The notes under the pieces: generated by a model | What the model saw: only the letters and a program-made list of their open reading frames with translations | The model's database searches: none | What the model was told of the DNA's origin: nothing | Program-made: the position numbers and the translations under genes | Sequence record: LR756502.1 | Length of the DNA stretch: 64,000 nucleotides | Strand: one strand, 5' to 3' | Part shown: in pieces, positions 1 through 57,403 of the stretch | Layout of the letters: each line of letters opens with the position of its first letter | Numbering within the stretch: position 1 is the stretch's first letter

Positions 1-330
1 TGCTCCTGCAGGACCTGTTGATCCTGTTGCACCTTGTATACCTTGACTTCCAGTTGCTCCTGCAGGACCTGTTGATCCTGTTGCACCTTGTATACCTTGA
101 CTTCCAGTTGCTCCTGCAGGACCTGTTGATCCTGTTGCACCTTGTATACCTTGACTTCCAGTTGCTCCTGTTGATCCGGTAGCACCTTGTATACCTTGAC
201 TTCCAGTTGCTCCGGTAGCACCTTGTATACCTTGACTCCCAGTTGCTCCTGTTATACCTTGTATACCTTGACTTCCGGTATCACCTTGTATACCTTGACT
301 TCCGGTTGCTCCAGTTGGTCCAGTGTTAAC
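1..330 (-). repeat. Collagen-coding tandem repeat; 54-bp unit ([18 protein letters not shown]) about 3 times, plus shorter degenerate units
   Basis: tgctcctgcaggacctgttgatcc... recurs at 1, 55 and 109. Confidence 0.95.
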
Positions 331-3300
331 TGGTGCTGTTTGCCAAGTAGCTGAGGTTGCTGAAGTGGCTATTAATGTCTGTCCAACACTTGGTCCAGTT
401 GATCCTGATACATAAACAGACAAACCATTTGTCCTAATAGCATTTGTCTCAATATAATTTGTTGATCCTATAATTGTTTTGTTTGTAAGTGATGCTGTTA
501 CTGACGGAAAACTAGATAAAATACTTGGTATATTATCTAAGTATATCTTATCAGCTACTGACATAAACCCAGCACTTGTTTGTGATGCTGTTGCATGTGT
601 TGTACCACCTCCTATTTGTCCGTGACTATGAACGTGATCTTGTCTAGCAAATGCATTTTGACTACCAATTTGATTTGTTGACCCAATTGTTGACGGTGTT
701 CCTGTTGTTAGTGGATCAGAACCGTTTGGTAGATGTCTGGACTGATGTGATTCTATTGTAATACCATTTACTTGACCAACTCCTGTTATTGAGTTACTAC
801 CCATAACTAAATTACCAGACATTGCTCTGCCTCCATTTGTTAGTAGGTATTGTGTGTGTGAATCGACTCCTAGATTTATTAAGGATGAGTGATCTGCTGC
901 CGCATTTATACCAGATGCTTTGAACCCTATAACCGGTCTTTGATCTCTTATCTCAACTATACTAGATGTTCCTTGTTGAACAATAATACCAGCTATTAAA
1001 GCAACTCCATCACTGAAATATGTTGGTGGTGTTGGTATATCAGCATTTTGAGCATCTAATAATAATGCATATTCTGCTTGGCCATAAACCATAAAGTATT
1101 TTTCTTGGCCATCGTCACCTAATACATAAAGTGAGTGTTTTGTATAATTTGATGCAGACAAACCGATTAATGAGTTTGTTCCTCCATAGTATGAGCTATC
1201 AACTGAATTGGTTATTGATATAACATGACCTCCTAATCCATCGCTATAATATGAACTAAATGTTATGCCAGTTCCTCCAGATGGTAGAAATTCATTGGCA
1301 CCGAAGTAGTAGACACCTGATGTTATATCTAGTTTATATGGTGTTATGCTAGTAGATACTATAGATCCAGATGAATAAACTGGTCCAAATCCTTTTCTGA
1401 ATAATTTAACAACTCTATTTGACCAATGTTCTGATGGTACAGGAGATCTCTCAACAAATTCCAATGATGCTGTTCCTGATCTAACTCTACCAAGTAATAT
1501 GTTTTCAGATGTTATTGGTATAGTTGAACTGTAGCTCAAAATTCCAGATGAGTTATAATAAATGTAACTTGTTGTGCTAGGTGGTACTGATAATGATGTG
1601 TTTATCCATGTCTTTTTATATAATACATCATCCACCTCATAGTATCCAAATCCTTCAGCTATACTAACTGTAAGTCCTCCTCCATCACCAATAACACCAC
1701 CTTGAACAACACCCATTGTGGATGTTTCTGTTATTAATGTTGAAACATCTGTAGTTGTAGTTGTATTGTATGTTATATTTAAACCACCATTTATTGTAAA
1801 ATCACCAACTTCTGTGTCTGTGAATACAATAGATAAATTATCTGAAGTTGATAATACCTTTGATGTCTCAAAAGATCCAAATATACTACCTGTTGATGTT
1901 GGGTTGTTAATTATAACATGATTGTTTGTATTCTCAACAACTGTTGAAATTACCCTGAGCTCACATGGATTTCCCGCATCATTTGGATTGTATATAGCAT
2001 AATCCCACCCAGTTACGTTCACTGCATTTAGCTTACATTTAGCTCCCTGTTCAATAAACAAGAAATAGGATCCTGTTTGAGGTATACTCTTTCCTGTATT
2101 TGCTTGAACAGAGTTCATAATAATCTCACAATTATTACCACTTGCCTTTGCGAAATATGTAGGTGATACATTAGCCATTCCATGTGAATAACTATGTAGT
2201 AAAAGAATTCTAGAAGAAGCTGTACTTGATCCAGATACATCATTTGTTGCTAGGAATCCTTTATCAAATTGATATGTACTTCCATATCCACATCCAACTA
2301 CCTGTACTGTACTTGATGATGTGTTTCCGTAACAAACAACATGTGTGTCGTTGCTACCAAATGTTATATCTTTTATAACAAATGCTGAATTTCCAGTAAT
2401 ATCTTGTTGTGAACTATGGAAGAATGCGGAATATGGTAGATCTACTCCAGGTAAAGAATAGGTTCCAGCTTGAACACCATCAACTAATAGACTTTCGACC
2501 ATTGAGAAATCAGATCCAAGGAATATGTTTTGGTTAGATGTTTTTGGTCTAATTATTGTATTTTGTCCTTCACCAATAACATTAATATATGGACGCATTG
2601 TAATCTCATCCTCGTAATATATACCTGGTCCAACTTTAACCATCCATCTATTTGATTCAGATGCTCCGACAACTGAGTTAATTGCATCTTTTATACTAGT
2701 AAAATCCCCATCTTTACTAAATACGGTTAATATTCTTGGGTCTTTATTAGTTATAAAGAATGGTGCACTTTCTGGTATAGATTGTTTAAGATGTTGAATA
2801 TATCCATCAATTTGACCAGTCCCATCAGGATGTTCAACTTTTATATCATAAACCAAATTAGTGTCAATCGATGATCCAACAATTTTAATATCTGAGAAGG
2901 TACCAACATTACCCATAAATATTCCATACTCCCAATTATGAACGTGCATACTACTTGCATCAATTACTGCACCATCTTCAGCATATAATGCAATTCCATT
3001 ATTCTCACCTAGGTTACCGGATGATATAATCTCAGCACTAGATCCAGTTCCGGAAACATATGTACCGACTGTATATGTACCACCAAATGGTAGATTGTAA
3101 TAGTTTTCTAAGTTTGCGTATGCCACAAACCCATTTTGAGAAATAACTTTTGTACCATATGTATATACTCCATTGTAGTCTATATACTCACCATAAAATA
3201 AGGTGTCTTGTGAATCAGAGTAAACACCAATACCTATATCACAATTATTAAATGATATTTTATGTGCTTGTGAGTAGTCTCCACTATCATATACCTTTAT

Positions 3301-5313
3301 ACCTTCTTTTCCTGGCCAAGTATTCTGAATTGTCATAAATGATAATTCATTGTAAATACCTATATTAAATACTGAGTGGTTTCCGGCTGGTTCAATAACA
3401 GTTGATTGTATAGAAGCCCCAATTATTGAAATATATTGCTTTCCTCCAACAGCTAGATTTATAGGTGGTTCTGTGTAAATACCCGGACTGATATTAATTA
3501 AATATCTGTTACTCTCACTTGCTGAATCTATACTAGCAACTGCTTCTGCGATTGATGTAAAATCACCACCTCTTTTAGCAACATTAATTATATTCAAGTC
3601 ATGATTATAGATATAGAAAGGTGCGTTGTTATTAAGAACGGTTTTTTGAGTGTTAATATCACCAAAGAAACTACCAATTGTGCCATCGTGATTTATTTGT
3701 ATATCTTCAATATATGAGTCAGTTATATTTACTGAGTCTAGTATTAAAGTTGGTGCCACTCCATAATCAAGTGATACAACACCATAATCAAATCCTCTTA
3801 TACTTGATGAGATTGCTCTTAACTCACCACCATTATCAGCAGCTAAACAGGTTGCTAAATTTGAGAATGCTCCACCAAAAACTCTCATTGTTGTATTTGT
3901 AAGTGTTAATAATGTATTTGGTCCACTTACATAGGCAAATGTTGTTACATATGTAGGTCCTGTTAAGTCTTTATAGGTACAGTTTGTTAGAACTATTTGA
4001 GATACGTAATCAGCGGTGTTATTTACAATTACTCCATTTGTTATATCACCAGTTATACTACATCTATCAATATAAACAATTGATGTATATGATGATGTAG
4101 ATCCGTAACATTGAACTTGAGTTGTATTGTTGTTGAAATTACAGTCTTTAATTAAGAATCCGGTACCACCAGTTCCTTCATGATAAACTGCTAATCCTCC
4201 AATACCATTAGCTCCATTCATTATAAGGTTAGTTATAGATGATCCATCATGTCCTATGAATATTGTGTTTGTTGAAAGTGTTGGTATAATAAGTACGCTA
4301 CCTAGAGTATTTGCAATAATTGAAATACCAGACTTCATAGTTATTGTATCTTCTATGTATATACCTGGTCCAACTTTAATAACAAATGGATTACCAGTTG
4401 ATGATGTTGTAATTGAATCAACCGCACTTTTAATTGAAGAGAATTGATTGGATGCTGTTACACCTTTCTTAACTTCTATTACTTTTATGTCAGTATTTAC
4501 GGAACCTGTTGCTCCCATTTCACCTGCTGGTCCTGTTGCTCCAGTACCTGCTGGTCCTGTTGCACCTGTTGCTCCCGCTGGTCCTGTAGCACCTGCTAGT
4601 CCTGGTAATGCATCAATTGTTGTATGTAAGTGACTAACTTGGTTACCTTCGTAATGTGTTGTTACTGTTTTTGTGTCTCCGATTGTATGAACATATGTTT
4701 TAAGTACAAGACGGTCTGTTAAATTTATTACTGTTTTTGGTAAGAAAAAGGAATTTTCATACAACTCCATTGTTTCTGAAGATATTAAAAGATCATCTGA
4801 TGTAGCTATTAGACTTTCTGTCCCACCTGGGTAAGTTCTAACATAAAGCTCTCCATAGAAGTATGTTGGTTGTGATATATTATATCCTGAAGAAACTCTA
4901 GCATATAAGTTTATATCCCATACACCGGATTGTAATAATGGTACGTTTGGAAGTCCAATTGGGTTTACAAATTCCTCTATAAGAACTGGAGTTGGGTTTG
5001 TACCAATATCCATTATACTATCTATAGATGATCCTGTGAGTCCATCAAATACAGCATACATCTCTTTGTACCCAGATATATCAGAATCTACTGAATTATT
5101 AAAGTATAATATCCTACCAGTTGTTATTCCTGGTATTCCTTGAGATCCTGTTGGTCCTTGAGATCCTGTTGGTCCTTCTGGTCCAGTTATTGAGACTCCA
5201 AGTGAAATCCATGCACCATCAGACGGAGCAGTTCCACTCCATTCCCATCTATTTCCGTTTGGGTCAGTGTATATCTCTCCAGTGTATGTGGGTATAGGCC
5301 AATTAATTGCCAT
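1..5313 (-). CDS. Giant tail fibre / receptor-binding protein with collagen-like segments and three pectin-lyase-like beta-helix modules (3' partial, >1770 aa)
   Basis: Manual translation from ATG at 5313 ([20 protein letters not shown]...) stays open to base 1. Gly-X-Y runs near 5130-5190, 4500-4610 and 1-330. Three repeats of (D/Q)F(T/S)SIxxA(V/I)xS...(V/I)xPGIYxE. Absent from the ORF track because no stop lies in the window. Confidence 0.85.
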
Positions 5314-5337
5314 AGTAATAATATAATTTTTATAGTC

Positions 5338-5346
5338 TATATATTA
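5338..5346 (-). promoter_or_regulatory. Putative phage late promoter motif TAATATATA (representative copy)
   Basis: Same 9-mer lies shortly upstream of ATGs. Minus: 5338, 6676, 33103, 42674, 45866. Plus: 11423, 15591, 22913, 26853, 33485, 34489, 42689, 45964, 62860. TGATATATA variants at 39494 and 39863. Analogy to T4 late promoter TATAAATA is inference. Confidence 0.65.
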
Positions 5347-5393
5347 AAAAATATTATTCAATAAGGATGTATTTAAGTAAATTATCTGAGTGA

Positions 5394-6008
5394 TTAGATA
5401 TTAATTATGTATTCTTTTATAGATTTTAGCTTAGTCTTATATTCCATTCCGTGCCAAGACTTAATAATAACATCACCCGCAATGTGTGAGTTGTTTTGCC
5501 AGCAGTTACATTCTACATCAAGACTAGCAATTCCCTTGCCATTTCCTATAGTCCATCTTCTAGACTTTAGTTCTTTATTTATTGATAATTCGTCAGTCTC
5601 ATCATTTCTGTCCCATACTCTTTTTAGAAATGCTCTAACATCTTTTGTATTTATCATTACAATCACACCAGCGTTAAACCATCCAGTAAGAGTATTACCC
5701 CCTAATCCACCTCTTAACTCAATCATGCCATATTCAAATCCATCGTGTAGAATATCTTTAATATCACCACCAACATTTAAGCTATCACAATCCTCATATA
5801 CAACTAAACTACCATCTTCTATTGTTGATAGAAATTCCATTAACCATGCTATTTTTTCCCACCAAACTTTTCTCTCAGGACACCTTTTGATATTGCTTGA
5901 GACATACTCAAGTCCATTAAGATAAGCATACTCCCTATTAATTGGGCTTGTTAGGTCGTATAATTCTGTATGTTCTATTGTGTAATGTTGTGTTAAATAA
6001 TATTTCAT
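5394..6008 (-). CDS. Glycosyltransferase (GT-A fold, GT34/MNN10-like)
   Basis: WEKIAWL, VYEDCDS (DxD-like) and FNAGVIVM motifs. Confidence 0.65.
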   Translation of the reverse strand: MKYYLTQHYTIEHTELYDLTSPINREYAYLNGLEYVSSNIKRCPERKVWWEKIAWLMEFLSTIEDGSLVVYEDCDSLNVGGDIKDILHDGFEYGMIELRGGLGGNTLTGWFNAGVIVMINTKDVRAFLKRVWDRNDETDELSINKELKSRRWTIGNGKGIASLDVECNCWQNNSHIAGDVIIKSWHGMEYKTKLKSIKEYIINI

Positions 6009-16009: not shown

Positions 16010-16464
16010 AACATATTAAATCAGTAAATGAATTCTTTAATTTCTTCAAAAAAGATGAAGAAGATGAGTTAGCTTTGGAGTTCATTAAAAGGATAAAGAA
16101 GGTTAAGGGAATATGTCCGTATGAGATAAGTAAGCTAACTCCAGAAGATGTACTATCACACTACAATACAAACGATTTAACGAATAATCAAGTTGACTAT
16201 GTTAGAAAATATAGTCAGTCATATAAAATAGTATTTGATGATGTTGTGTTAGTAACAACATTGATAGCTAGGAAGAGTGGTGGATTAGCGGGATTAGAGG
16301 AGGATATTTACTTTCTCAGAATAGATGGTGAGAAGATTAATTGTAGAGAGAGCTATAGAAAAAAAATATTTGAACTTACAAAGTCAATATTTGCTAATAC
16401 ACAAAGACTTAAGATAGTTAGTAAGGTTAGATCTAATATGAATACAGCAGCAGACTTATTATGA
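16006..16464 (+). CDS. Tagged protein, NPAADxL family paralog 2
   Basis: MKHIKSVNEFF...NMNTAADLL. Confidence 0.75.
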   Translation: MKHIKSVNEFFNFFKKDEEDELALEFIKRIKKVKGICPYEISKLTPEDVLSHYNTNDLTNNQVDYVRKYSQSYKIVFDDVVLVTTLIARKSGGLAGLEEDIYFLRIDGEKINCRESYRKKIFELTKSIFANTQRLKIVSKVRSNMNTAADLL

Positions 16465-16871
16465 AATACTTAAAAAAATTTGAGGGTTATGACAAATCAC
16501 TTGTTGAAAGATTTGGTATGTCAGATATAGTAGAGTATATCTTTGATATATGTCGTGATTTAGAAGATGATGGGTTTGTGGTTACTATTGGTGGGTTTTC
16601 TATGTATGATGCGGATGGGAAACTTAAATATCTTACAACCCATCGACCCGGAGGTGATCCAGTAAAAAAATTCTTTATGATTATATACAAGTTCAATTAT
16701 GGTGTTGGTGACTTTGTAGTTAACAAAGAATTAACATCTACTTTAAGAAGATTAAGAGATTATATGGATTCAGTTGGGTATTCAACTAACTTGGATTACC
16801 CTGACGGTAATCTGAATCTGGGAACAAAAGATGTGGGAACTAGTCAGATGGTTCATTTTATTAGGAAGTGA
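16461..16871 (+). CDS. Tagged protein, DLxDxG(F/Y)...RLxxY family
   Basis: MKYLKKFE; DICRDLEDDGF...RRLRDYMDSVGY. Confidence 0.7.
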   Translation: MKYLKKFEGYDKSLVERFGMSDIVEYIFDICRDLEDDGFVVTIGGFSMYDADGKLKYLTTHRPGGDPVKKFFMIIYKFNYGVGDFVVNKELTSTLRRLRDYMDSVGYSTNLDYPDGNLNLGTKDVGTSQMVHFIRK

Positions 16872-16933
16872 TTAACTGAGTCTATTAGCTAGTGAATTAC
16901 TAGCTATCGACACTGTTAGATCCACTGCCTTAC

Positions 16934-20309: not shown

Positions 20310-20894
20310 TTAAAATGAAAATTTCTCAAAGTGTTCTGTAAAACTACCAGCTTTTGAAGTTGGATCAGTTCCAAAAGAAACTTTCCTTTTTAATGTGCCT
20401 AGTCCACTATCTATATAAACCCAGTAGATAGGAGTCATATTATTTATTCTTTCCAAAATAATATTAAGAGATTCAGATGGATTTACATCTTTAAATCTAG
20501 ATAGATTAGCTTCTCGAACATCATCCTCTTTAACATAATAATTTTGGTCTGCTTTGATTCCATAAAGTGGAAAATCCTTAATACACTTATAAAGTGTTAG
20601 ATCCCCACTGTCAATATCCTTATTGCAATCAGCATCAACATCAATCGACATTTGTTCTTTAAGAAACTCTAGCTCTTGTCGGTATTCACTTAATGCTTCT
20701 TTTACAAGAGGATCAAGTACGTTAAGATTATCAATACCCTTCATTAAAATATCCTCCATTTGCTCTGGAGATGCTTTCTCCATATCAATTTCAAACTGTT
20801 CTAATGTATATGTTGAATCTAATCCAAATTCCAAATCAAATAAGTTATTCAGATTCTTCAAATCATCCAATTTTTCTTGTCTAGTCTTTTCCAT
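20310..20894 (-). CDS. Hypothetical protein; RQEKLDDL motif at N-terminus
   Basis: ORF track. Confidence 0.65.
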   Translation of the reverse strand: MEKTRQEKLDDLKNLNNLFDLEFGLDSTYTLEQFEIDMEKASPEQMEDILMKGIDNLNVLDPLVKEALSEYRQELEFLKEQMSIDVDADCNKDIDSGDLTLYKCIKDFPLYGIKADQNYYVKEDDVREANLSRFKDVNPSESLNIILERINNMTPIYWVYIDSGLGTLKRKVSFGTDPTSKAGSFTEHFEKFSF

Positions 20895-20908
20895 TTTATT
20901 TTTTAATT

Positions 20909-21177
20909 TTATTTTTTAATATTCGCTTTCATTCTAGAAACACGAGTTTTAATAGTAATGTATGTATCATCTGCTTCAATAACCTCAGCCTCACTACTAA
21001 TCTCACCACTAATATATACTTTATCACCAACCTTTATTAAACTTGAATTTTTAGCTTGTTTCCTCATAAGGAGTAAACATAGAAAAGTCATTAGAAATGA
21101 GAATCCTACTATACCTATTGCAACATATGCAGGGCTAGTATCTCGATACTCTAGGAAAGAAAAGAATCAAAATTCAT
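20909..21177 (-). pseudogene. Membrane protein with KOW/SH3-like C-terminus and an apparent 1-nt frameshift near 21154
   Basis: ATG at 21177 follows a sigma-A promoter. One extra T gives MNFDSFLFLEYRDTSPAYVAIGIVGFSFLMTFLCLLL..., continuous with 20909..21091. Confidence 0.55.
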
Positions 21178-21302
21178 AGTTGTTTGTTTTTGTTGATACA
21201 AATATACGTACTTATTTTGAATCTGCAAACAATTTCAAGATTATTTTTGTTAAAATGTGTAACTAATTGAAAGCCACGCAAAAAAGTAAAAAATAAACTG
21301 AT

Positions 21303-21370
21303 ACATAACAGCACCTAAATCGCAAATTTTGTGAAGAACAAAATCAGCGTTTAGCTGCGAACAGTTATGC
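21303..21370 (+). repeat. attC-like site 1
   Basis: R'' ACATAAC, arms GCACCTAAA/TTTAGCTGC and ATTTTGT/ACAAAAT, R' GTTATGC. Confidence 0.75.
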
Positions 21371-21433
21371 GCCATCTATCGTTTGGTTTCTATAATGGGT
21401 TGGTATGGGTAGTATTTGCATACATACAAAGTA
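21364..21433 (+). repeat. 70-bp ORF-less mini-cassette, copy 1 (copy 2 at 21759-21828, 68/70 identical)
   Basis: GTTATGCGCCAT...ACAAAGTA, followed each time by a new GTT; internal TTGGTATG/CATACAA arm with an extra G. Confidence 0.85.
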
Positions 21434-21446
21434 GTTACCTGCAAGG

Positions 21447-21632
21447 CTACTGAACATCCTTAACCAGACGTTTATCAATTAACCATTGCTTGTATTCTTG
21501 AAGTACATAAGGTAAATTCATTGTGCTTTTACCGTTTTTGCTTTCATAAATAAATTGACCGTGTTCGTTTTTTTCACAATCAATTTCTTTGCAAAATTCA
21601 ATCTCGTTTTTTACTAATTCTTGAATATCCAT
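21447..21632 (-). CDS. Cassette-borne hypothetical protein (61 aa)
   Basis: Lies between core GTTACCTGC (21434) and R'' GCAGGTAAC (21671). Confidence 0.7.
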   Translation of the reverse strand: MDIQELVKNEIEFCKEIDCEKNEHGQFIYESKNGKSTMNLPYVLQEYKQWLIDKRLVKDVQ

Positions 21633-21672
21633 TTCGTTATTTATTTAAGTTCCTACTGATAAACCGCCCAGC

Positions 21673-21765
21673 AGGTAACAGCGGTTTGGCAAAAGATGCC
21701 ATAAACATTGTGCGAACTTTGAAATTTCCGTTAGGCAGCCTTCGCCAAGCCTGATAACGTTATGC
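21673..21765 (+). repeat. attC-like site 2
   Basis: AGGTAAC-agcggTTTGGC...GCCAAGcctgataac-GTTATGC. Confidence 0.7.
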
Positions 21766-21839
21766 GCCATATATCGTTTGGTTTCTATAATGGGTTGGTA
21801 TGGGTGGTATTTGCATACATACAAAGTAGTTATAAAACG

Positions 21840-22001
21840 TTACTTTTTACTTTTTTTCCCACCCGCCTGTATGTGATTAAGGAGTATAGTTTCAATGTAA
21901 TTATTCAAATTGCGGTTGTCCTGCTTGGCAAGTTTCGCAAGTTGACCAAGGAGGGTTTTATTCTCCTTACTTGGTCTGAATGTTAATGTTTCGTGTGCCA
22001 T
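21840..22001 (-). CDS. Cassette-borne ribbon-helix-helix (Arc/CopG-like) protein, 53 aa (not in ORF track)
   Basis: MAHETLTFRPSKENKTLLGQLAKLAKQDNRNLNNYIETILLNHIQAGGKKSKK*. Confidence 0.7.
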   Translation of the reverse strand: MAHETLTFRPSKENKTLLGQLAKLAKQDNRNLNNYIETILLNHIQAGGKKSKK

Positions 22002-22109
22002 TATTTAATAAGTGTTACATTTTTTATTTTCATTATTCTTGTAACTTACTGATAATCAAAGAGAATAAAACAATAAAACCCTCCATAAAAAAGTAAAAAG
22101 TAACCGATT

Positions 22110-22177
22110 TTATAACATCACCTTTGCAAAATTGGCGTAAAAAACGCCAACTATCGCAAAGCTGGATGCCGTTATAA
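22110..22177 (+). repeat. attC-like site 3
   Basis: TTATAAC-atcacCTTTGC-aaaaTTGGCGT-aaaaa-ACGCCAA-ctatcGCAAAG-ctggatgcc-GTTATAA. Confidence 0.8.
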
Positions 22178-22390
22178 GCCATTTTTCAACTCACTAATAA
22201 CTTCGTCAATTTCGTAGCTATCAATGTAATCACCATTACAATCGTATTCTCGTTCAGTATCTATTCCAAATTCACCCTCTCTATAATTAGCTAAGTTAAA
22301 TCTACGAATTGATTTTAAACGGCTTATAATATCAGCTATAAGTAATGGCTGTTTCGGTGGGGTATTCGAGTTTTCTGCTTCTATTGACAT
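22172..22390 (-). CDS. Cassette-borne hypothetical protein whose N-terminus is encoded by the attC arm
   Basis: Core GTTATAAGCC (22171) vs GGCTTATAAT (22321); QPLLIADIIS is read through the left arm. Confidence 0.7.
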   Translation of the reverse strand: MSIEAENSNTPPKQPLLIADIISRLKSIRRFNLANYREGEFGIDTEREYDCNGDYIDSYEIDEVISELKNGL

Positions 22391-22448
22391 TTGTGCTTAA
22401 TTTAAAAGTAAGTAGTTCTAATCAGCCACTACTCATAGCTGTAACCTC
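22321..22448 (+). repeat. attC-like site 4, truncated at R'
   Basis: CAGCTATAAGTAATGGCTG vs CAGCCACTACTCATAGCTG inverted, 17/19; ends GCTGTAAC without a following GTT. Confidence 0.6.
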
Positions 22449-22925
22449 GCTTTTTCTTTACTCTCTGCAATTATTACCAACCCACCTCCTGAGTGGTAGT
22501 TATCCAGATTCACCTGGACTAAAAGGATTGTGCATCATTGAAACTTTCTTAGATGCTAACGTCGAAAGATTCGCAAGGGTTCGGCCTGTTCTAAGTCATT
22601 ACTCGATACATTGAACTCATATCGTTATATCTTCTCTATTAAAAAAGTTGGTTATGTAGGAACAGTTTATAACGATTCTCATACTGCAGTTATTCAAACA
22701 TCTGATTACGCTTATATCGAAAATAACAGAGTAATCGATAAGGCAATAAGATTGTTATACGCTAATTATTTACCTGACTTAAATAGTTTTAATCCTAAAT
22801 TTTTATCTGATTTATTTGGCATCTTTTTAGATATTTATGTTATTAAACAAATATATGGAACTTTTTTGATTCTGACAAACTTTTTCCCCGTGTAAATCTT
22901 ATTAGAATGTTTTAATATATAGTTT

Positions 22926-23384
22926 ATGAAAAACATCAAAACATACGAAGATTTCGTTAATGAAGAAATCAATTGGAAAGGAGTAGTAGCTGGTGCTATG
23001 TCTTTGCTTGCAACCGCATGTTCAAATGTTCAAATACATGATAAGTCAGGTAAAGAAATATCAACCGATAATTATAATGCTGATGGTATTGTACAAAGTA
23101 TCTACACCTCGAAAGGTACAACAAGATCGTATGGTCGTGGTTTAATGCGAAATTATCCAGATGAAATTACTGGATATAAATATACAATTCTTGATAATAA
23201 TGGTAATCAAATAGTTGTTGGTCTAAAAGATGATCTAATTTCTACCGGGGATAGTGTCACTGTTTCTATTGAAAATGGAAATATTGAACTAATTATGAAG
23301 GAAGAAGATTGTAAAGATCCAAGTAAATGTTCACCATTACCAAATGGGAAAGAAGGAGTCAATATAACTAAATATCATTTTTAA
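22926..23384 (+). CDS. Tagged protein with hydrophobic lipobox-like segment after the tag
   Basis: MKNIKTYEDFVNEE-INWKGVVAGAMSLLATAC; TAATATATA at 22913. Confidence 0.7.
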   Translation: MKNIKTYEDFVNEEINWKGVVAGAMSLLATACSNVQIHDKSGKEISTDNYNADGIVQSIYTSKGTTRSYGRGLMRNYPDEITGYKYTILDNNGNQIVVGLKDDLISTGDSVTVSIENGNIELIMKEEDCKDPSKCSPLPNGKEGVNITKYHF

Positions 23385-23637
23385 TATTTAAGCTATCTTC
23401 AATCCACTTGTCAAAGTCCTTTGCTGGAGTTTTATTTAGTCCTTCAAAGTAACATTTATTTAATAAAGACTTAACTTCTTCTCTACTATACATATTTGTA
23501 GAGAAGAATTCTATAATACTTAATAAATCCTCAACATCATCATAAGGTGCTGATCTTTCTTCGGTGTATAACTCCTCGGATACATTATCCTTTACGCTAT
23601 CAACGATATCTTGTATATCTTCCTTTGTGTAATTCAT
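23368..23637 (-). CDS. Hypothetical protein
   Basis: ORF track. Confidence 0.6.
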   Translation of the reverse strand: MNYTKEDIQDIVDSVKDNVSEELYTEERSAPYDDVEDLLSIIEFFSTNMYSREEVKSLLNKCYFEGLNKTPAKDFDKWIEDSLNIKNDI

Positions 23638-23651
23638 TATCTTATTATTTG

Positions 23652-51666: not shown

Positions 51667-51681
51667 TTTATTGTTATTTAG

Positions 51682-51761
51682 TGCAGATGAGAGGATTCGA
51701 ACCCCTGTTCCAGTGGGGTTAGAATCCACCTCGTTCCCAGAACGAATTAGGTACCACCTGC
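51682..51761 (-). tRNA. Atypical tRNA, most parsimonious anticodon CTA (amber suppressor-like); no encoded CCA
   Basis: GCAGGTG/CATCTGC acceptor + A73; canonical AGGGG-TTCGAAT-CCTCT T arm; GTGGA-TTCTAAC-CCCAC; enlarged D region; sigma-A motif at 51771. Confidence 0.65.
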
Positions 51762-51802
51762 AGTTAAAAACAAATATAGGAATTTTTGTTGAAAGGAAAA
51801 AA

Positions 51803-56596: not shown

Positions 56597-56634
56597 AATT
56601 ATTTAATTCCTATTTAAGTTTAATTAAGTTTAAT

Positions 56635-56846
56635 AAAGGACGGCAATCGTAGTCAACTTTCTGTTTAAAACATCATTTGTCTATTGGCCTCTACCTCGGC
56701 ATAATAACGCTTCTCACACGCTAGCCTGTTTTGAGTTGCACCCTCGCTAGTAATAACGACTGTTTAGGTCTCCTAACTTAAGAAGTGGTGTGTTGAACTT
56801 CCTCACATCCATTACTGGGTAGTGCGATGTAACATCCACCGTCTTT
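56635..56846 (-). ncRNA. rnpB: Minimal RNase P RNA
   Basis: P1 GACGGTGG/TTGCCGTC; P2 ACATC/GATGT; P3 with GTAA loop; GAGGAAGTTCAAC pairing with GTTGACT (P4 with bulged U); GGGTGCAAC; TAGACAAATGAT; AACAGAA. Order matches bacterial RNase P conserved regions I-V. Confidence 0.8.
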
Positions 56847-56848
56847 TA

Positions 56849-57403
56849 TTAAACTAATAAACTCAATTTATAATCTCTATTTATATTGGTTAATTCTAAC
56901 CATTCTTTTATTTCTCTTTCAACATTAGAATGTAAATGTCTATATGATTGAAAGTTTATTTTTTTTGGGTTACCAATCCACTCGGTGAATAATTCAACCA
57001 ATTGACTAGGTAACCAACATATCTCATCTGGATCCGTTGTGAATCCTTTAGAGTTTACTATTGTTATGAAGTATAATATCTCTTTAACTTCGTGATAGTT
57101 ACCCCATTTATTTGACCATTCTAATAGAGCTTCCATTCTACGAACATCTTCTCTACCAATTCCACAAGGGAGCGATCTCATCAAGTTCGAGGCGAATATA
57201 GATGATTTGGCTTTCCTAACATCAATCATATCTTCATTAAGAATGTCGATATTTAGTGAGTCATTTTTATATGGGTCAACCCCAATGTACTTGTGCCATT
57301 TTTCTAAGATATAGTCTGCACTACACCCATCCATATTAACACCCATTGTTTCATGGAAGTTAAAGCAAAAATCTATTAAATTATCTAGTTGGGATTTAGT
57401 CAT
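56849..57403 (-). CDS. Hypothetical protein, C-terminal RDYKLSLLV tag
   Basis: Sigma-A motif at 57409. Confidence 0.7.
   Translation of the reverse strand: MTKSQLDNLIDFCFNFHETMGVNMDGCSADYILEKWHKYIGVDPYKNDSLNIDILNEDMIDVRKAKSSIFASNLMRSLPCGIGREDVRRMEALLEWSNKWGNYHEVKEILYFITIVNSKGFTTDPDEICWLPSQLVELFTEWIGNPKKINFQSYRHLHSNVEREIKEWLELTNINRDYKLSLLV

What the first reader, a model, noticed from the sequence alone, without database searches (positions are those of the whole stretch)
21303..22448. Integron-like attC cassette array inside a phage genome
Seen: four long palindromes plus two copies of a 70-bp mini-unit, each running ...TAAC/TAAT to GTTA.... The cassette rule holds three times: GTTACCTGC (21434) vs GCAGGTAAC (21671), GTTATAAAA (21829) vs TTTTATAAC (22108), and GTTATAAGCC (22171) vs GGCTTATAAT (22321). 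The duplicated 70-bp unit precedes two different cassettes, as expected from excision and re-insertion. Cargo is three small ORFs, including an RHH protein, all antisense to the R''->R' direction and so aligned with phage transcription. No integrase is in the window. Known: IntI recombines folded attC at G|TT, and integrase-less attC clusters exist in bacteria. Inference: the phage captures or shuffles cassettes using a host or remote phage integrase.
Basis: partly seen in the sequence, partly recalled or inferred. Interest (0 to 1): 0.8.

Follow-up and report, generated by a model that had tools for sequence, protein, structure and literature searches.

The report
Integron-like gene cassettes in a phage
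A huge phage carries a short, decaying row of small mobile gene cassettes, each bounded by a folded DNA hairpin, and the same cassettes in other phages lie next to a compact Xer-type recombinase, which points to an integron-like gene-shuffling system that I found no description of.

Summary
A covariance model built only from hairpin sites of other phages hits the 64-kb window four times. The rest of the 642-kb genome (LR756502.1) gives only two marginal matches.

Two of the three cassettes are demonstrably mobile. The ORF61 unit (window 21763-21434) and the ORF53 unit recur at about 86-96% DNA identity in unrelated phage contigs.

These sites are not canonical IntI/attC integrons. In 53 viral contigs, arrays of such hairpins lie directly upstream of a 268-aa Xer-type tyrosine recombinase. 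It lacks the extra domain that defines integron integrases (IntI). A conserved attI-like junction, TAAC|TATCATATAT, lies between array and gene.

The isolates of cultured Polaribacter phage Freya that I compared differ only by whole units cut at AAC| beside that recombinase gene.

The huge phage has no such recombinase, and its sites are degraded. Its locus is therefore an orphan cluster. It could be mobilised only by a recombinase supplied in trans by a co-infecting phage, or it is inert.

Recombination itself is inferred, not shown. Phage attC clusters lacking an integrase were published in 2023. I found no description of this recombinase-linked platform.

The parts
22331..22446 (-). Hairpin site P4, the first in the array. 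The stem is intact but both R half-sites are lost: the 5' flank is GCGAG|G and the 3' box is ATTATAAGCC instead of GTTA. The loop holds the ORF72 start codon (22390).
   Evidence: CM R1: 55.5 bits, E 6e-10, model positions 12-129 only; fold.
22172..22390 (-). ORF72, the cargo of cassette 1. It is a singleton protein of unknown function. Its stop codon TAA lies inside the terminal box GGCTTATAAC|.
   Evidence: The complementary pair is 22172-84/22317-29.
22105..22181 (-). Hairpin site P3: GGCTTATAAC|GGC..stem..GAT|GTTATAAAATCG. It opens the ORF53 cassette, which runs 22170->21829.
   Evidence: R1: 35.6 bits, E 1e-5. Homologous to the site in L023/L024 (window 22175-22023, 86%). The minus strand folds at -16.9 kcal/mol, z -4.1.
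21840..22001 (-). ORF53, a likely ribbon-helix-helix protein. Its cassette ends ..CGTTTTATAAC| at 21829. In L023/L024 a 101-aa ORF precedes it inside the same cassette.
   Evidence: An 18-nt perfect inverted repeat lies at 21839-56/22087-104.
21759..21828 (-). 70-nt unit, copy B: TAAC|TACTTTGTATGTATGC...GGCGCATAAC|. It has no hairpin. It may be a remnant of the attI-like site and recombinase leader.
   Evidence: It aligns loosely to the conserved array-recombinase junction.
21668..21769 (-). Hairpin site P2. It opens the ORF61 cassette, which runs 21758->21434.
   Evidence: R1: 58.8 bits. It is part of the 330-bp unit shared at about 93% with L003, L013, L014 and L017-L021.
21447..21632 (-). 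ORF61, the cargo of the most widely travelled cassette. Its cassette ends ..GCCTTGCAGGTAAC| at 21434.
   Evidence: It belongs to a 90%-identity cluster of 24 members. The identical protein occurs in many different phage neighbourhoods.
21364..21433 (-). 70-nt unit, copy A.
   Evidence: 97% identical to copy B.
21298..21374 (-). Hairpin site P1, the weakest member. It opens the last unit, which has no distal TAAC boundary.
   Evidence: R1: 26.5 bits, E 1.5e-3. The minus strand folds at -15.8 kcal/mol, z -4.0. Its 5' flank resembles that of P3 (D2).
20909..21091 (-). ORF60, the possible cargo of the last unit. It abuts the backbone gene 20310-20894, which is conserved in the relative L001.
   Evidence: The exact protein is not in the collection.

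Best explanation
The locus is an orphan array of three to four mobile gene cassettes. They belong to a large family found in phages, mostly of Bacteroidota-type hosts.

**Cassette anatomy (coding strand).** Each cassette starts just after an AAC and continues through:
- a short unpaired spacer of about 5 nt
- a 15-25-bp stem with a variable loop, giving a site of about 85 or about 124 nt
- 1-2 nt, then GTTA plus about 7 nt
- the small ORF
- a sequence complementary to those 7 nt, ending in TAAC

**Proposed mechanism.** Joining a cassette's two ends would give a hairpin with a 9-11-bp outer arm resembling a XerC-binding arm (my own recollection of the dif sequence, not checked here). I propose that a compact Xer-type tyrosine recombinase cuts and exchanges strands at AA|C at the foot of the folded coding strand. 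This would excise cassettes as circles and insert them at a conserved site, TAAC|TATCATATAT, about 50 nt upstream of its own gene. That is the logic of an integron with a different enzyme, a different spacer geometry and inverted cargo.

**This genome.** The huge phage has no such recombinase, and its sites are eroded. The array was probably acquired from such a phage. It is now either inert or mobilisable only when a co-infecting phage supplies the enzyme.

**Shown.**
- the units and their boundaries
- conservation of the structure
- the end-complementarity rule
- the physical link between arrays and the recombinase gene
- natural gain and loss of whole cassettes

**Inferred.**
- catalysis by that recombinase
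- a folded single-strand substrate
- circular intermediates
For: **1. Family membership.** A model trained on other phages hits only the four palindromes in the window. The rest of the genome gives only two marginal 16-bit matches.

**2. Mobility with exact boundaries.**
- Window 21763-21434 is about 89-96% identical to DNA in at least eight different gene neighbourhoods.
- Homology stops at TAAC|G on both sides.
- The ORF53 unit behaves the same way.

**3. Structure is conserved rather than sequence (33 sites).**
- 92.5% of stem cells pair, against 66.5% in shuffles and 36-45% when the partner is slid.
- 14 of 15 stem pairs change on both sides.
- AAC and GTT are invariant.

**4. Uniform orientation.** The coding strand folds better in 29 of 33 sites. 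One G.T wobble is invariant.

**5. The cassette rule.**
- 53% of 86 distinct consecutive site pairs show at least 6/7 complementarity between cassette start and cassette end.
- Shuffled pairs give 3.6%.
- The two halves of one in-array site look like the control.

**6. Link to the recombinase.**
- In 53 viral loci, 147 sites lie upstream of the gene on its strand, against 9 downstream and 1 on the other strand.
- With the model on 7 loci, all 76 hits are on the gene's strand and 74 lie upstream.
- The junction TAAC|TAT[CT]ATATAT is conserved.
- A deleted remnant of the recombinase gene follows the ORF53 cassette in L023/L024.

**7. Natural polymorphism in cultured Polaribacter phage Freya.**
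- Five of the ten isolates were compared (Freya_1, _2, _5, _8 and _10).
- Their flanks are 98-100% identical.
- They differ by 0, 1, 2 or all units of a 4,942-bp array.
- Freya_8 has a precise internal loss of one 902-bp unit.
- Every junction is at AAC|, and the array ends 47 nt before the integrase start codon.

**8. The recombinase is Xer-like.** It aligns continuously with P. abyssi XerA. It aligns with VchIntIA in two pieces, with about 48 residues missing.
Against: - No recombination was observed, and no circles or junction reads were examined.
- The recombinase could be an ordinary lysogeny integrase whose attP happens to lie beside a variable region.
- The training sites were picked by a scanner that demands pairing, so the pairing percentage is partly circular. 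The model hits in untrained loci and the cassette rule are independent of that.
- G.T wobbles on the sense strand would equally fit a hairpin that works in RNA.
- 47% of consecutive pairs do not obey the rule. Missed sites may explain this, but it was not checked.
- Hairpin-plus-leader modules also occur with other ORFs, and ORF61 occurs without its hairpin (L093 and L016). Some exchange is therefore not at AAC|.
- In this genome the sites are weak, one has lost both boxes, and no enzyme is encoded. Function here may be nil.
- Identifying the 70-nt unit as an attI remnant rests on a loose alignment.
Confidence: 0.68

Rival explanations
1. These are ordinary bacterial integron parts: a cluster of attC sites lacking an integrase (a CALIN) that the phage picked up. 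The host's IntI would recombine them.
For: - The AAC...GTT boxes, hairpins and cassette rule are as in attC.
- Qi et al. 2023 (PMC9892861) predicted attC sites in 17 phages, including Polaribacter phage P12002L. They showed that IntI1 recombines one of them.
- That site spans the end of a cassette of this family. Their attC1 is a short member of the family.
Against: - Arrays sit next to a Xer-type recombinase without the IntI domain.
- Cargo is inverted relative to canonical cassettes.
- The spacer is 5/1 nt, with no canonical extrahelical bases.
- Close relatives of the recombinase (60-80% identity) are found on viral contigs. Bacterial genomes yield only relatives of 56% identity or less, with few sites.
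- No IntI-like gene is near any array examined.
Confidence: 0.1
2. The hairpins are regulatory elements of the early transcripts, such as processing sites, stabilisers or promoter-bearing stem-loops. Cassettes would be shuffled by homologous or microhomology-mediated recombination between them, as proposed (as I recall it) for the PeSL modules of T4-type phages.
For: - The hairpins are always on the sense strand, with conserved G.T (G.U) wobbles.
- Loops carry shared motifs and often the start codon.
- Hairpin-plus-leader modules are found with different ORFs, and ORF61 is found without its hairpin.
Against: - Stem sequences differ between neighbouring cassettes, so there is little homology to recombine on.
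- Breakpoints fall on one phosphodiester at AAC|.
- The complementarity between cassette start and cassette end has no regulatory rationale.
- Arrays are tied to a recombinase gene with a conserved junction.
- A dual role as both RNA element and recombination site is not excluded.
Confidence: 0.15
3. The units are miniature single-strand transposons of the IS200/IS605 type, inserted 3' of a TAAC target by an HUH transposase acting in trans.
For: - Insertion is always after a tetranucleotide (TAAC).
- The element ends in the same tetranucleotide.
- There is a hairpin close to one end.
Against: - No TnpA or TnpB showed up among the precomputed Pfam hits for called genes in the ORF61 and ORF53 loci. 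The other loci were not screened for these.
- There is only one hairpin per unit, and it abuts the cut site.
- Units occur in ordered arrays at one locus rather than scattered.
- The rule of complementary ends and the link to a tyrosine recombinase do not fit this type.
Confidence: 0.03

Closest known systems
Integron gene cassettes and attC sites, including integrase-less attC clusters (CALINs). CALINs were reported in phages by Qi et al. 2023 (PMC9892861).
   Same: - Arrays of small one- or two-gene units.
- Each unit has an imperfect hairpin whose only invariant letters are AAC and GTT.
- Structure is conserved while sequence is not.
- Crossover lies at the foot of the hairpin.
- The first bases of a cassette are complementary to its far end.
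- One insertion site lies next to a tyrosine recombinase gene.
- Orphan clusters without an integrase exist.
   Different: - The recombinase lacks the IntI additional domain.
- Cargo reads on the strand that corresponds to the attC bottom strand.
- The spacer next to the R box is 5 nt against 1-2 nt, with no canonical extrahelical bases.
- Loops often contain the ORF start.
- The recombinase gene has the same orientation as the cargo and lies downstream of the array.
- The carriers are phages.
Xer recombinases and dif, and elements that use Xer on folded single strands (the CTX phage attP, as I recall the literature).
   Same: - The recombinase is closest to XerA, XerD and XerC.
- The outer arm (TTGCnnATAA|C; GGCGCATAA|C in the window) resembles, from my memory of the dif sequence, the XerC arm of dif.
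- A folded strand would create the duplex site.
   Different: - There is no 28-bp duplex dif-like site.
- Many different sites occur per genome.
- Cassettes are moved, rather than dimers being resolved or a whole phage integrated.
PeSL (promoter-early stem-loop) modules of T4-type phages, cited from memory of the literature.
   Same: Stem-loops flank small hypervariable early ORFs of large phages and mark the units that are exchanged between phages.
   Different: - PeSLs are conserved in sequence and are thought to act through homologous recombination.
- Here only the structure and AAC/GTT are conserved, junctions are exact, and a dedicated recombinase is linked.
IS200/IS605 elements and their miniature derivatives.
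   Same: A single-strand hairpin and a tetranucleotide cleavage or target site.
   Different: No HUH transposase, one hairpin per unit, ordered arrays at a single locus.

Membership tests
Integron (attC cassette array) | Recombination site is an imperfect palindrome with conserved AAC ... GTT triplets at its base. | tested here: met
   AAC and GTT are invariant in 33 aligned sites. They are present in window sites P1-P3 and lost in P4.
Integron (attC cassette array) | R and L boxes are separated by an unpaired central spacer, with extrahelical bases that mark the recombined strand. | tested here: inconclusive
   An unpaired spacer exists but is asymmetric: about 5 nt on the 5' side against 1-2 nt on the 3' side. 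No canonical extrahelical bases were identified. Strand asymmetry comes from the spacer and from G.T wobbles.
Integron (attC cassette array) | The first bases of a cassette are complementary to the inverse core of its own site, which is the footprint of a circular intermediate. | tested here: met
   It holds three times in the window. In other loci, 53% of 86 consecutive pairs reach at least 6/7, against 3.6% in shuffles.
Integron (attC cassette array) | Cassette gain and loss occur at the G|TT (AA|C) position. | tested here: met
   Homology breakpoints lie at TAAC|. The five Freya isolates compared differ by whole units at AAC|.
Integron (attC cassette array) | An IntI integrase with the IntI-specific additional domain (I2 helix). 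| tested here: not met
   The associated recombinase is 268 aa. Against VchIntIA (2a3v) it aligns as 19-179/16-180 and 209-259/258-308, so about 48 residues are absent. It aligns continuously with XerA. It scores below the NCBIfam integron-integrase cut-off (167 against 265 bits). None is encoded in the 642-kb genome.
Integron (attC cassette array) | Cassette ORFs are mostly co-oriented with R''->R' and expressed from a promoter at the integrase end. | tested here: not met
   All ORFs read on the opposite strand and towards the recombinase gene.
Integron (attC cassette array) | Sites score with the IntegronFinder/HattCI attC models and are recombined by an integron integrase. | not testable with these tools
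   No attC model or assay was available here. In the literature, two sites of P12002L were predicted as attC and one was recombined by IntI1 (PMC9892861).
CALIN (cluster of attC sites lacking an integrase) | At least two sites in a row with no integrase nearby. | tested here: met
   There are four sites within 1.15 kb. No related recombinase is found in the genome. This holds only if the sites are accepted as attC-like.
Xer/dif system | A Xer-family recombinase acting on a 28-bp duplex site with two arms and a 6-8-bp centre. | tested here: inconclusive
   The recombinase is Xer-like. I looked for no duplex dif-like site. Only a folded strand gives two arms.
PeSL-type regulatory cassettes | A stem-loop plus promoter conserved in sequence between units. 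| tested here: not met
   Stem sequences differ between neighbouring units. A sigma-70-type scan shows no enrichment.
IS200/IS605 and miniature derivatives | An HUH transposase (or its use in trans), with hairpins near both ends. | tested here: not met
   There is one hairpin per unit. No TnpA or TnpB showed up among the precomputed Pfam hits for called genes in the ORF61 and ORF53 loci.

The most novel reading that the evidence does not exclude
Phages of Bacteroidota and their relatives own a private integron-like system. Its parts would be:
- a minimal Xer-type recombinase, without the domain thought necessary for single-strand attC recombination
- an attI-like site in the leader of the recombinase gene
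- arrays of up to 20 or more hairpin-bounded cassettes, each possibly with its own expression signals (shared loop motifs and the start codon in the loop hint at this)

The cassettes carry methyltransferases, a Tad3 anti-Thoeris protein and many unknown small proteins. The arrays may therefore serve as an exchangeable store of counter-defence genes.

The orphan array in this 642-kb phage would show that cassettes travel between small and huge phages.
Probability: 0.5. Interest if true: 0.9.

Novelty: new variant of a known kind. Interest (0 to 1): 0.8.

Why it matters
Integrons are the textbook device by which bacteria collect and reshuffle genes. They are defined by one enzyme family, IntI, whose extra domain is thought to explain how it handles folded single-strand sites.

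If a phage-borne system uses the same logic with a plain Xer-type enzyme, three things follow:
- The integron solution arose more than once, or it predates IntI.
- There is a natural test of what that extra domain is really needed for.
- Much of the patchwork of small accessory genes in phage early regions is explained.

The cultured Polaribacter phage Freya series and its host make this directly testable at the bench.

Known cargo includes orphan methyltransferases and an anti-Thoeris protein. The arrays may therefore be a compact catalogue of phage counter-defence genes.

Tried and rejected
- **Known RNA families.** Rfam finds only two tRNAs in the window.
- **Terminators and promoters.** The ordinary terminators of the window are perfect stems with T runs and look different. 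The terminator and promoter scan gives nothing beyond chance.
- **First hairpin scan.** My first scan required the TAAC/GTTA ends to pair in the minimum-energy fold. It missed the known sites and was dropped.
- **Inverted-repeat listing.** The general listing is dominated by A+T-rich chance pairs.
- **The 70-nt unit.** A 27-nt stretch of it has no exact match in the viral contigs, and the locus has no similar DNA in another phage record. Its origin rests on a loose alignment only.
- **Closest relative.** The nearest relative of the huge phage (L001, about 76% nucleotide identity) lacks the whole region. It has an HNH endonuclease gene there instead. Cassette-level comparison within this lineage was therefore impossible.
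- **Cargo function.** Pfam, PHROGs, NCBIfam and PADLOC give nothing reliable for ORF72, ORF61, ORF60 or the 101-aa partner of ORF53.
- **Flanks.** BLAST of the array flanks against all fetched loci did not identify a donor.
- **Model sensitivity.** Model R1 is dominated by one subfamily and detects the Polaribacter-type sites poorly. The Freya analysis therefore rests on the scanner and on direct alignment.
- **Unused tools.** The metagenome-contig scan, the large protein searches and structure prediction were not used.
Full report
**Source and layout.** The window is bases 558001-622000 of LR756502.1, an unannotated 642,428-bp 'uncultured phage' assembly. Region 21300-22450 holds three small ORFs on the minus strand: 72 aa (22390-22172), 53 aa (22001-21840) and 61 aa (21632-21447). 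A fourth, of 60 aa, follows at 21091-20909. Between the ORFs lie long imperfect palindromes and a 74-nt direct repeat at 21364-21437 and 21759-21832, 97% identical. Three of the palindromes (P1-P3) rank among the 14 best-folding 80-nt stretches of the window. They are unlike the window's ordinary terminators, which are perfect stems followed by T runs. They fold better on the minus strand, which is the coding strand.

**Are the cassettes real units?** The exact 61-aa protein belongs to a 90%-identity cluster of 24 members seen on many contigs. Two members of that cluster (P0008 and P0009) were looked up, and they lie in many unrelated phage-like neighbourhoods. At the DNA level, window 21763-21434 is 89-96% identical to those loci. 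The match ends at the same letters on both sides: flank...TAAC|GTTTTGCGG...hairpin...GTTACCTGC...ORF61...GCAGGTAAC|next unit.

The ORF53 unit behaves the same way:
- Window 22175-22023 (hairpin and leader) recurs in L023/L024.
- Window 22007-21825 (the ORF up to ...TTTTATAAC|) recurs there too.
- In those contigs an extra 101-aa ORF lies between the two pieces.

ORF72 is a singleton.

**A family of sites.** In the loci that carry ORF61, the neighbouring genes are preceded by hairpins of the same build but different sequence: AAC|, a spacer of about 5 nt, a 15-25-bp stem, a variable loop, 1-2 nt, then GTTA. All are oriented alike relative to the genes. An alignment of 33 such sites, none from the window, gives these figures:
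- AAC and GTT are invariant.
- 92.5% of stem cells pair, against 66.5% in shuffles and 36-45% when the partner is slid.
- 14 of 15 stem pairs change on both sides.
- One G.T wobble is invariant.

Because a pairing-based scanner picked the sites, the pairing figure is partly circular. The tests below are not.

A covariance model built from that alignment hits the window four times and nowhere else. The rest of the 642-kb genome gives only two 16-bit matches with E about 0.4-0.5.

Site P4 keeps its stem but has lost both AAC and GTT. P1 and P3 score low. P2 has two mismatches that its relatives lack. The array is eroding.

**The cassette rule.** In the window, the letters after each GTTA are complementary to the letters before the next TAAC. 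Across 86 distinct consecutive site pairs in other loci, 53% show at least 6/7 complementarity, against 3.6% for shuffled partners. The two halves of a single in-array site look like the control. This is the footprint expected if units pass through a circular form closed at the foot of the hairpin. It has no obvious regulatory rationale.

**The enzyme.**
- In L014 the array ends ...GGTGCTAAC|TAGTATATATAC. A 268-aa tyrosine recombinase gene starts 36 nt later on the same strand.
- In L023/L024 the ORF53 cassette is followed by TAAC|TACTATATAG and then the 3' remnant of such a gene.
- 53 viral contigs encode relatives of this protein, some on contigs of 100-362 kb.
- Strict scanner hits on the gene's strand number 147 upstream against 9 downstream, with 1 on the other strand.
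- The covariance model on seven untrained loci gives 76 hits, all on that strand and 74 of them upstream. Single loci hold about 13 to 18 sites within 8 kb.
- The junction TAAC|TAT[CT]ATATATAAAC lies about 45-55 nt before the start codon in nearly all loci.
- More distant homologues in bacterial genomes (56% identity or less) have few sites. This serves as a background control.

The protein is Xer-like. It aligns continuously with P. abyssi XerA. It aligns with VchIntIA only in two pieces, with about 48 residues of the IntI-specific region missing. It scores below the curated cut-offs for the integron integrase, XerC and XerD families.

**Natural polymorphism.** The closest cultured relatives of the recombinase are the integrases of Cellulophaga phage Ingeline and Polaribacter phages Freya and Leef. 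The ten Freya isolates range from 43,978 to 48,920 bp. I compared five of them, always across the array region and its flanks, not across whole genomes:
- Freya_1 and Freya_10 are 99.9-100% identical across the compared flanks, except for 4,942 bp holding 12 small ORFs.
- The insert is bounded by ...TTGTTTACAAC|GGATATGG and ...TTGTTGCTAAC|ACCCCTATAAC, 47 nt before the integrase start codon.
- Freya_2 has the first unit only (842 bp).
- Freya_5 has the first two units (1,744 bp).
- Freya_8 equals Freya_10 minus unit 2, with the junction ...TTGTTTACAAC|TTACATGTATAAGG.

The paper describing these phages mentions neither cassettes nor hairpins and takes the integrase as a sign of possible lysogeny.

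**This genome.** tblastn with three recombinases finds nothing in any part of LR756502.1 (best E 0.6). The nearest relative of the huge phage, L001, lacks window 20811-23649 altogether. It has an HNH endonuclease gene there, next to the same tRNA-Met. A fragment of a Mu-like tail-sheath gene lies just beside the array. The locus is therefore a variable spot that received foreign DNA.

The two 70-nt units start TAAC|TACTTTGTATGTATGC. They align loosely with the attI-like junction and leader. They may be remnants of a former platform that were carried along with a cassette. I hold this loosely.

**Comparison with what is known.** The logic is that of an integron, but three defining features fail or differ:
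- The IntI domain is absent.
- The cargo is inverted.
- The spacer geometry differs.

Qi et al. 2023 (PMC9892861) reported integrase-less attC clusters in 17 phages, including Polaribacter phage P12002L. They showed IntI1-mediated recombination of one P12002L site. Their attC1 is a short member of this family on the coding strand. Their attC2 spans a cassette end that obeys the rule. My scanner finds about eight candidate sites in that genome. They interpreted these as bacterial integron components carried by phages.

Six further literature searches found no description of arrays linked to a Xer-type recombinase, of the attI-like junction, or of the Freya polymorphism. The held library is incomplete, so prior work cannot be excluded.

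**Verdict.** The copy in this window is probably a relic. The family it belongs to looks like an undescribed, testable variant of the integron principle in phages. The mechanism remains inferred.

Noticed in passing
window 22611-22895 (+), with 22345-22614: A fragment of a Mu-like tail-sheath gene (DUF2586 positions 250-307 of 386; phrog_907). It sits out of context and appears frame-broken, right beside the array. It is probably a pseudogene remnant of acquired DNA.
   Followed up: partly
window 1-5394: Almost no complete ORF is listed here. Triplet-periodic GGN/CCN repeats occur near 4511-4610. This is probably a very long collagen-like ORF that runs off the window start.
   Followed up: no
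window 51681-51780: A tRNA-like sequence (GGGGTTCGAATCC T-arm plus acceptor-like stem) folds at about -19 kcal/mol. Neither ARAGORN nor Rfam calls it.
   Followed up: no
L001 9031-9447 and 8154-8711: The closest relative of the huge phage has HNH endonuclease genes next to the tRNA genes where this phage has the cassette array. The spot is a hotspot for mobile DNA.
   Followed up: partly
L023 630-1096 (also L024): The RHH protein ORF53 is preceded in the same cassette by a 101-aa ORF whose stop overlaps its start. The pair looks like a toxin-antitoxin module. The partner has no family match and is missing from the window.
   Followed up: partly
L019 2024-2632; L013 2514-3104 and 4867-5523; L003 8166-8903; L018 1647-2672; L020 896-1477; L021 1020-1679: Cassette cargo in other phages includes Tad3 (anti-Thoeris), N6/N4 and MT-A70 methyltransferases, an Rv2179c-like exonuclease and a metallophosphoesterase. 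This suggests counter-defence functions.
   Followed up: no
window 22331-22446; L003 6197-6321; L021 953-1076: In the roughly 124-nt class of sites the ORF start codon lies inside the hairpin loop. Loops share motifs such as AGAATTACAAAACTTCAA and TTAGCACAA..ATG, which may be expression signals.
   Followed up: no
L093, L092, L086: These loci hold truncated recombinase genes. L093 has hairpin sites on both sides of the remnant, as if cassettes had been inserted into the gene.
   Followed up: no
L118 and L120 (Fluviicola chromosomes): A related recombinase (46-52% identity) has sites downstream on the opposite strand. This is a different layout that may be a chromosomal variant.
   Followed up: no
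window 16873-16918 and 56627-56855: A TAAC...GTTA hairpin follows ORF 16461-16871 and is not matched by the model. A 17-nt, 94% inverted repeat flanks an intergenic stretch at 56627-56855.
   Followed up: no
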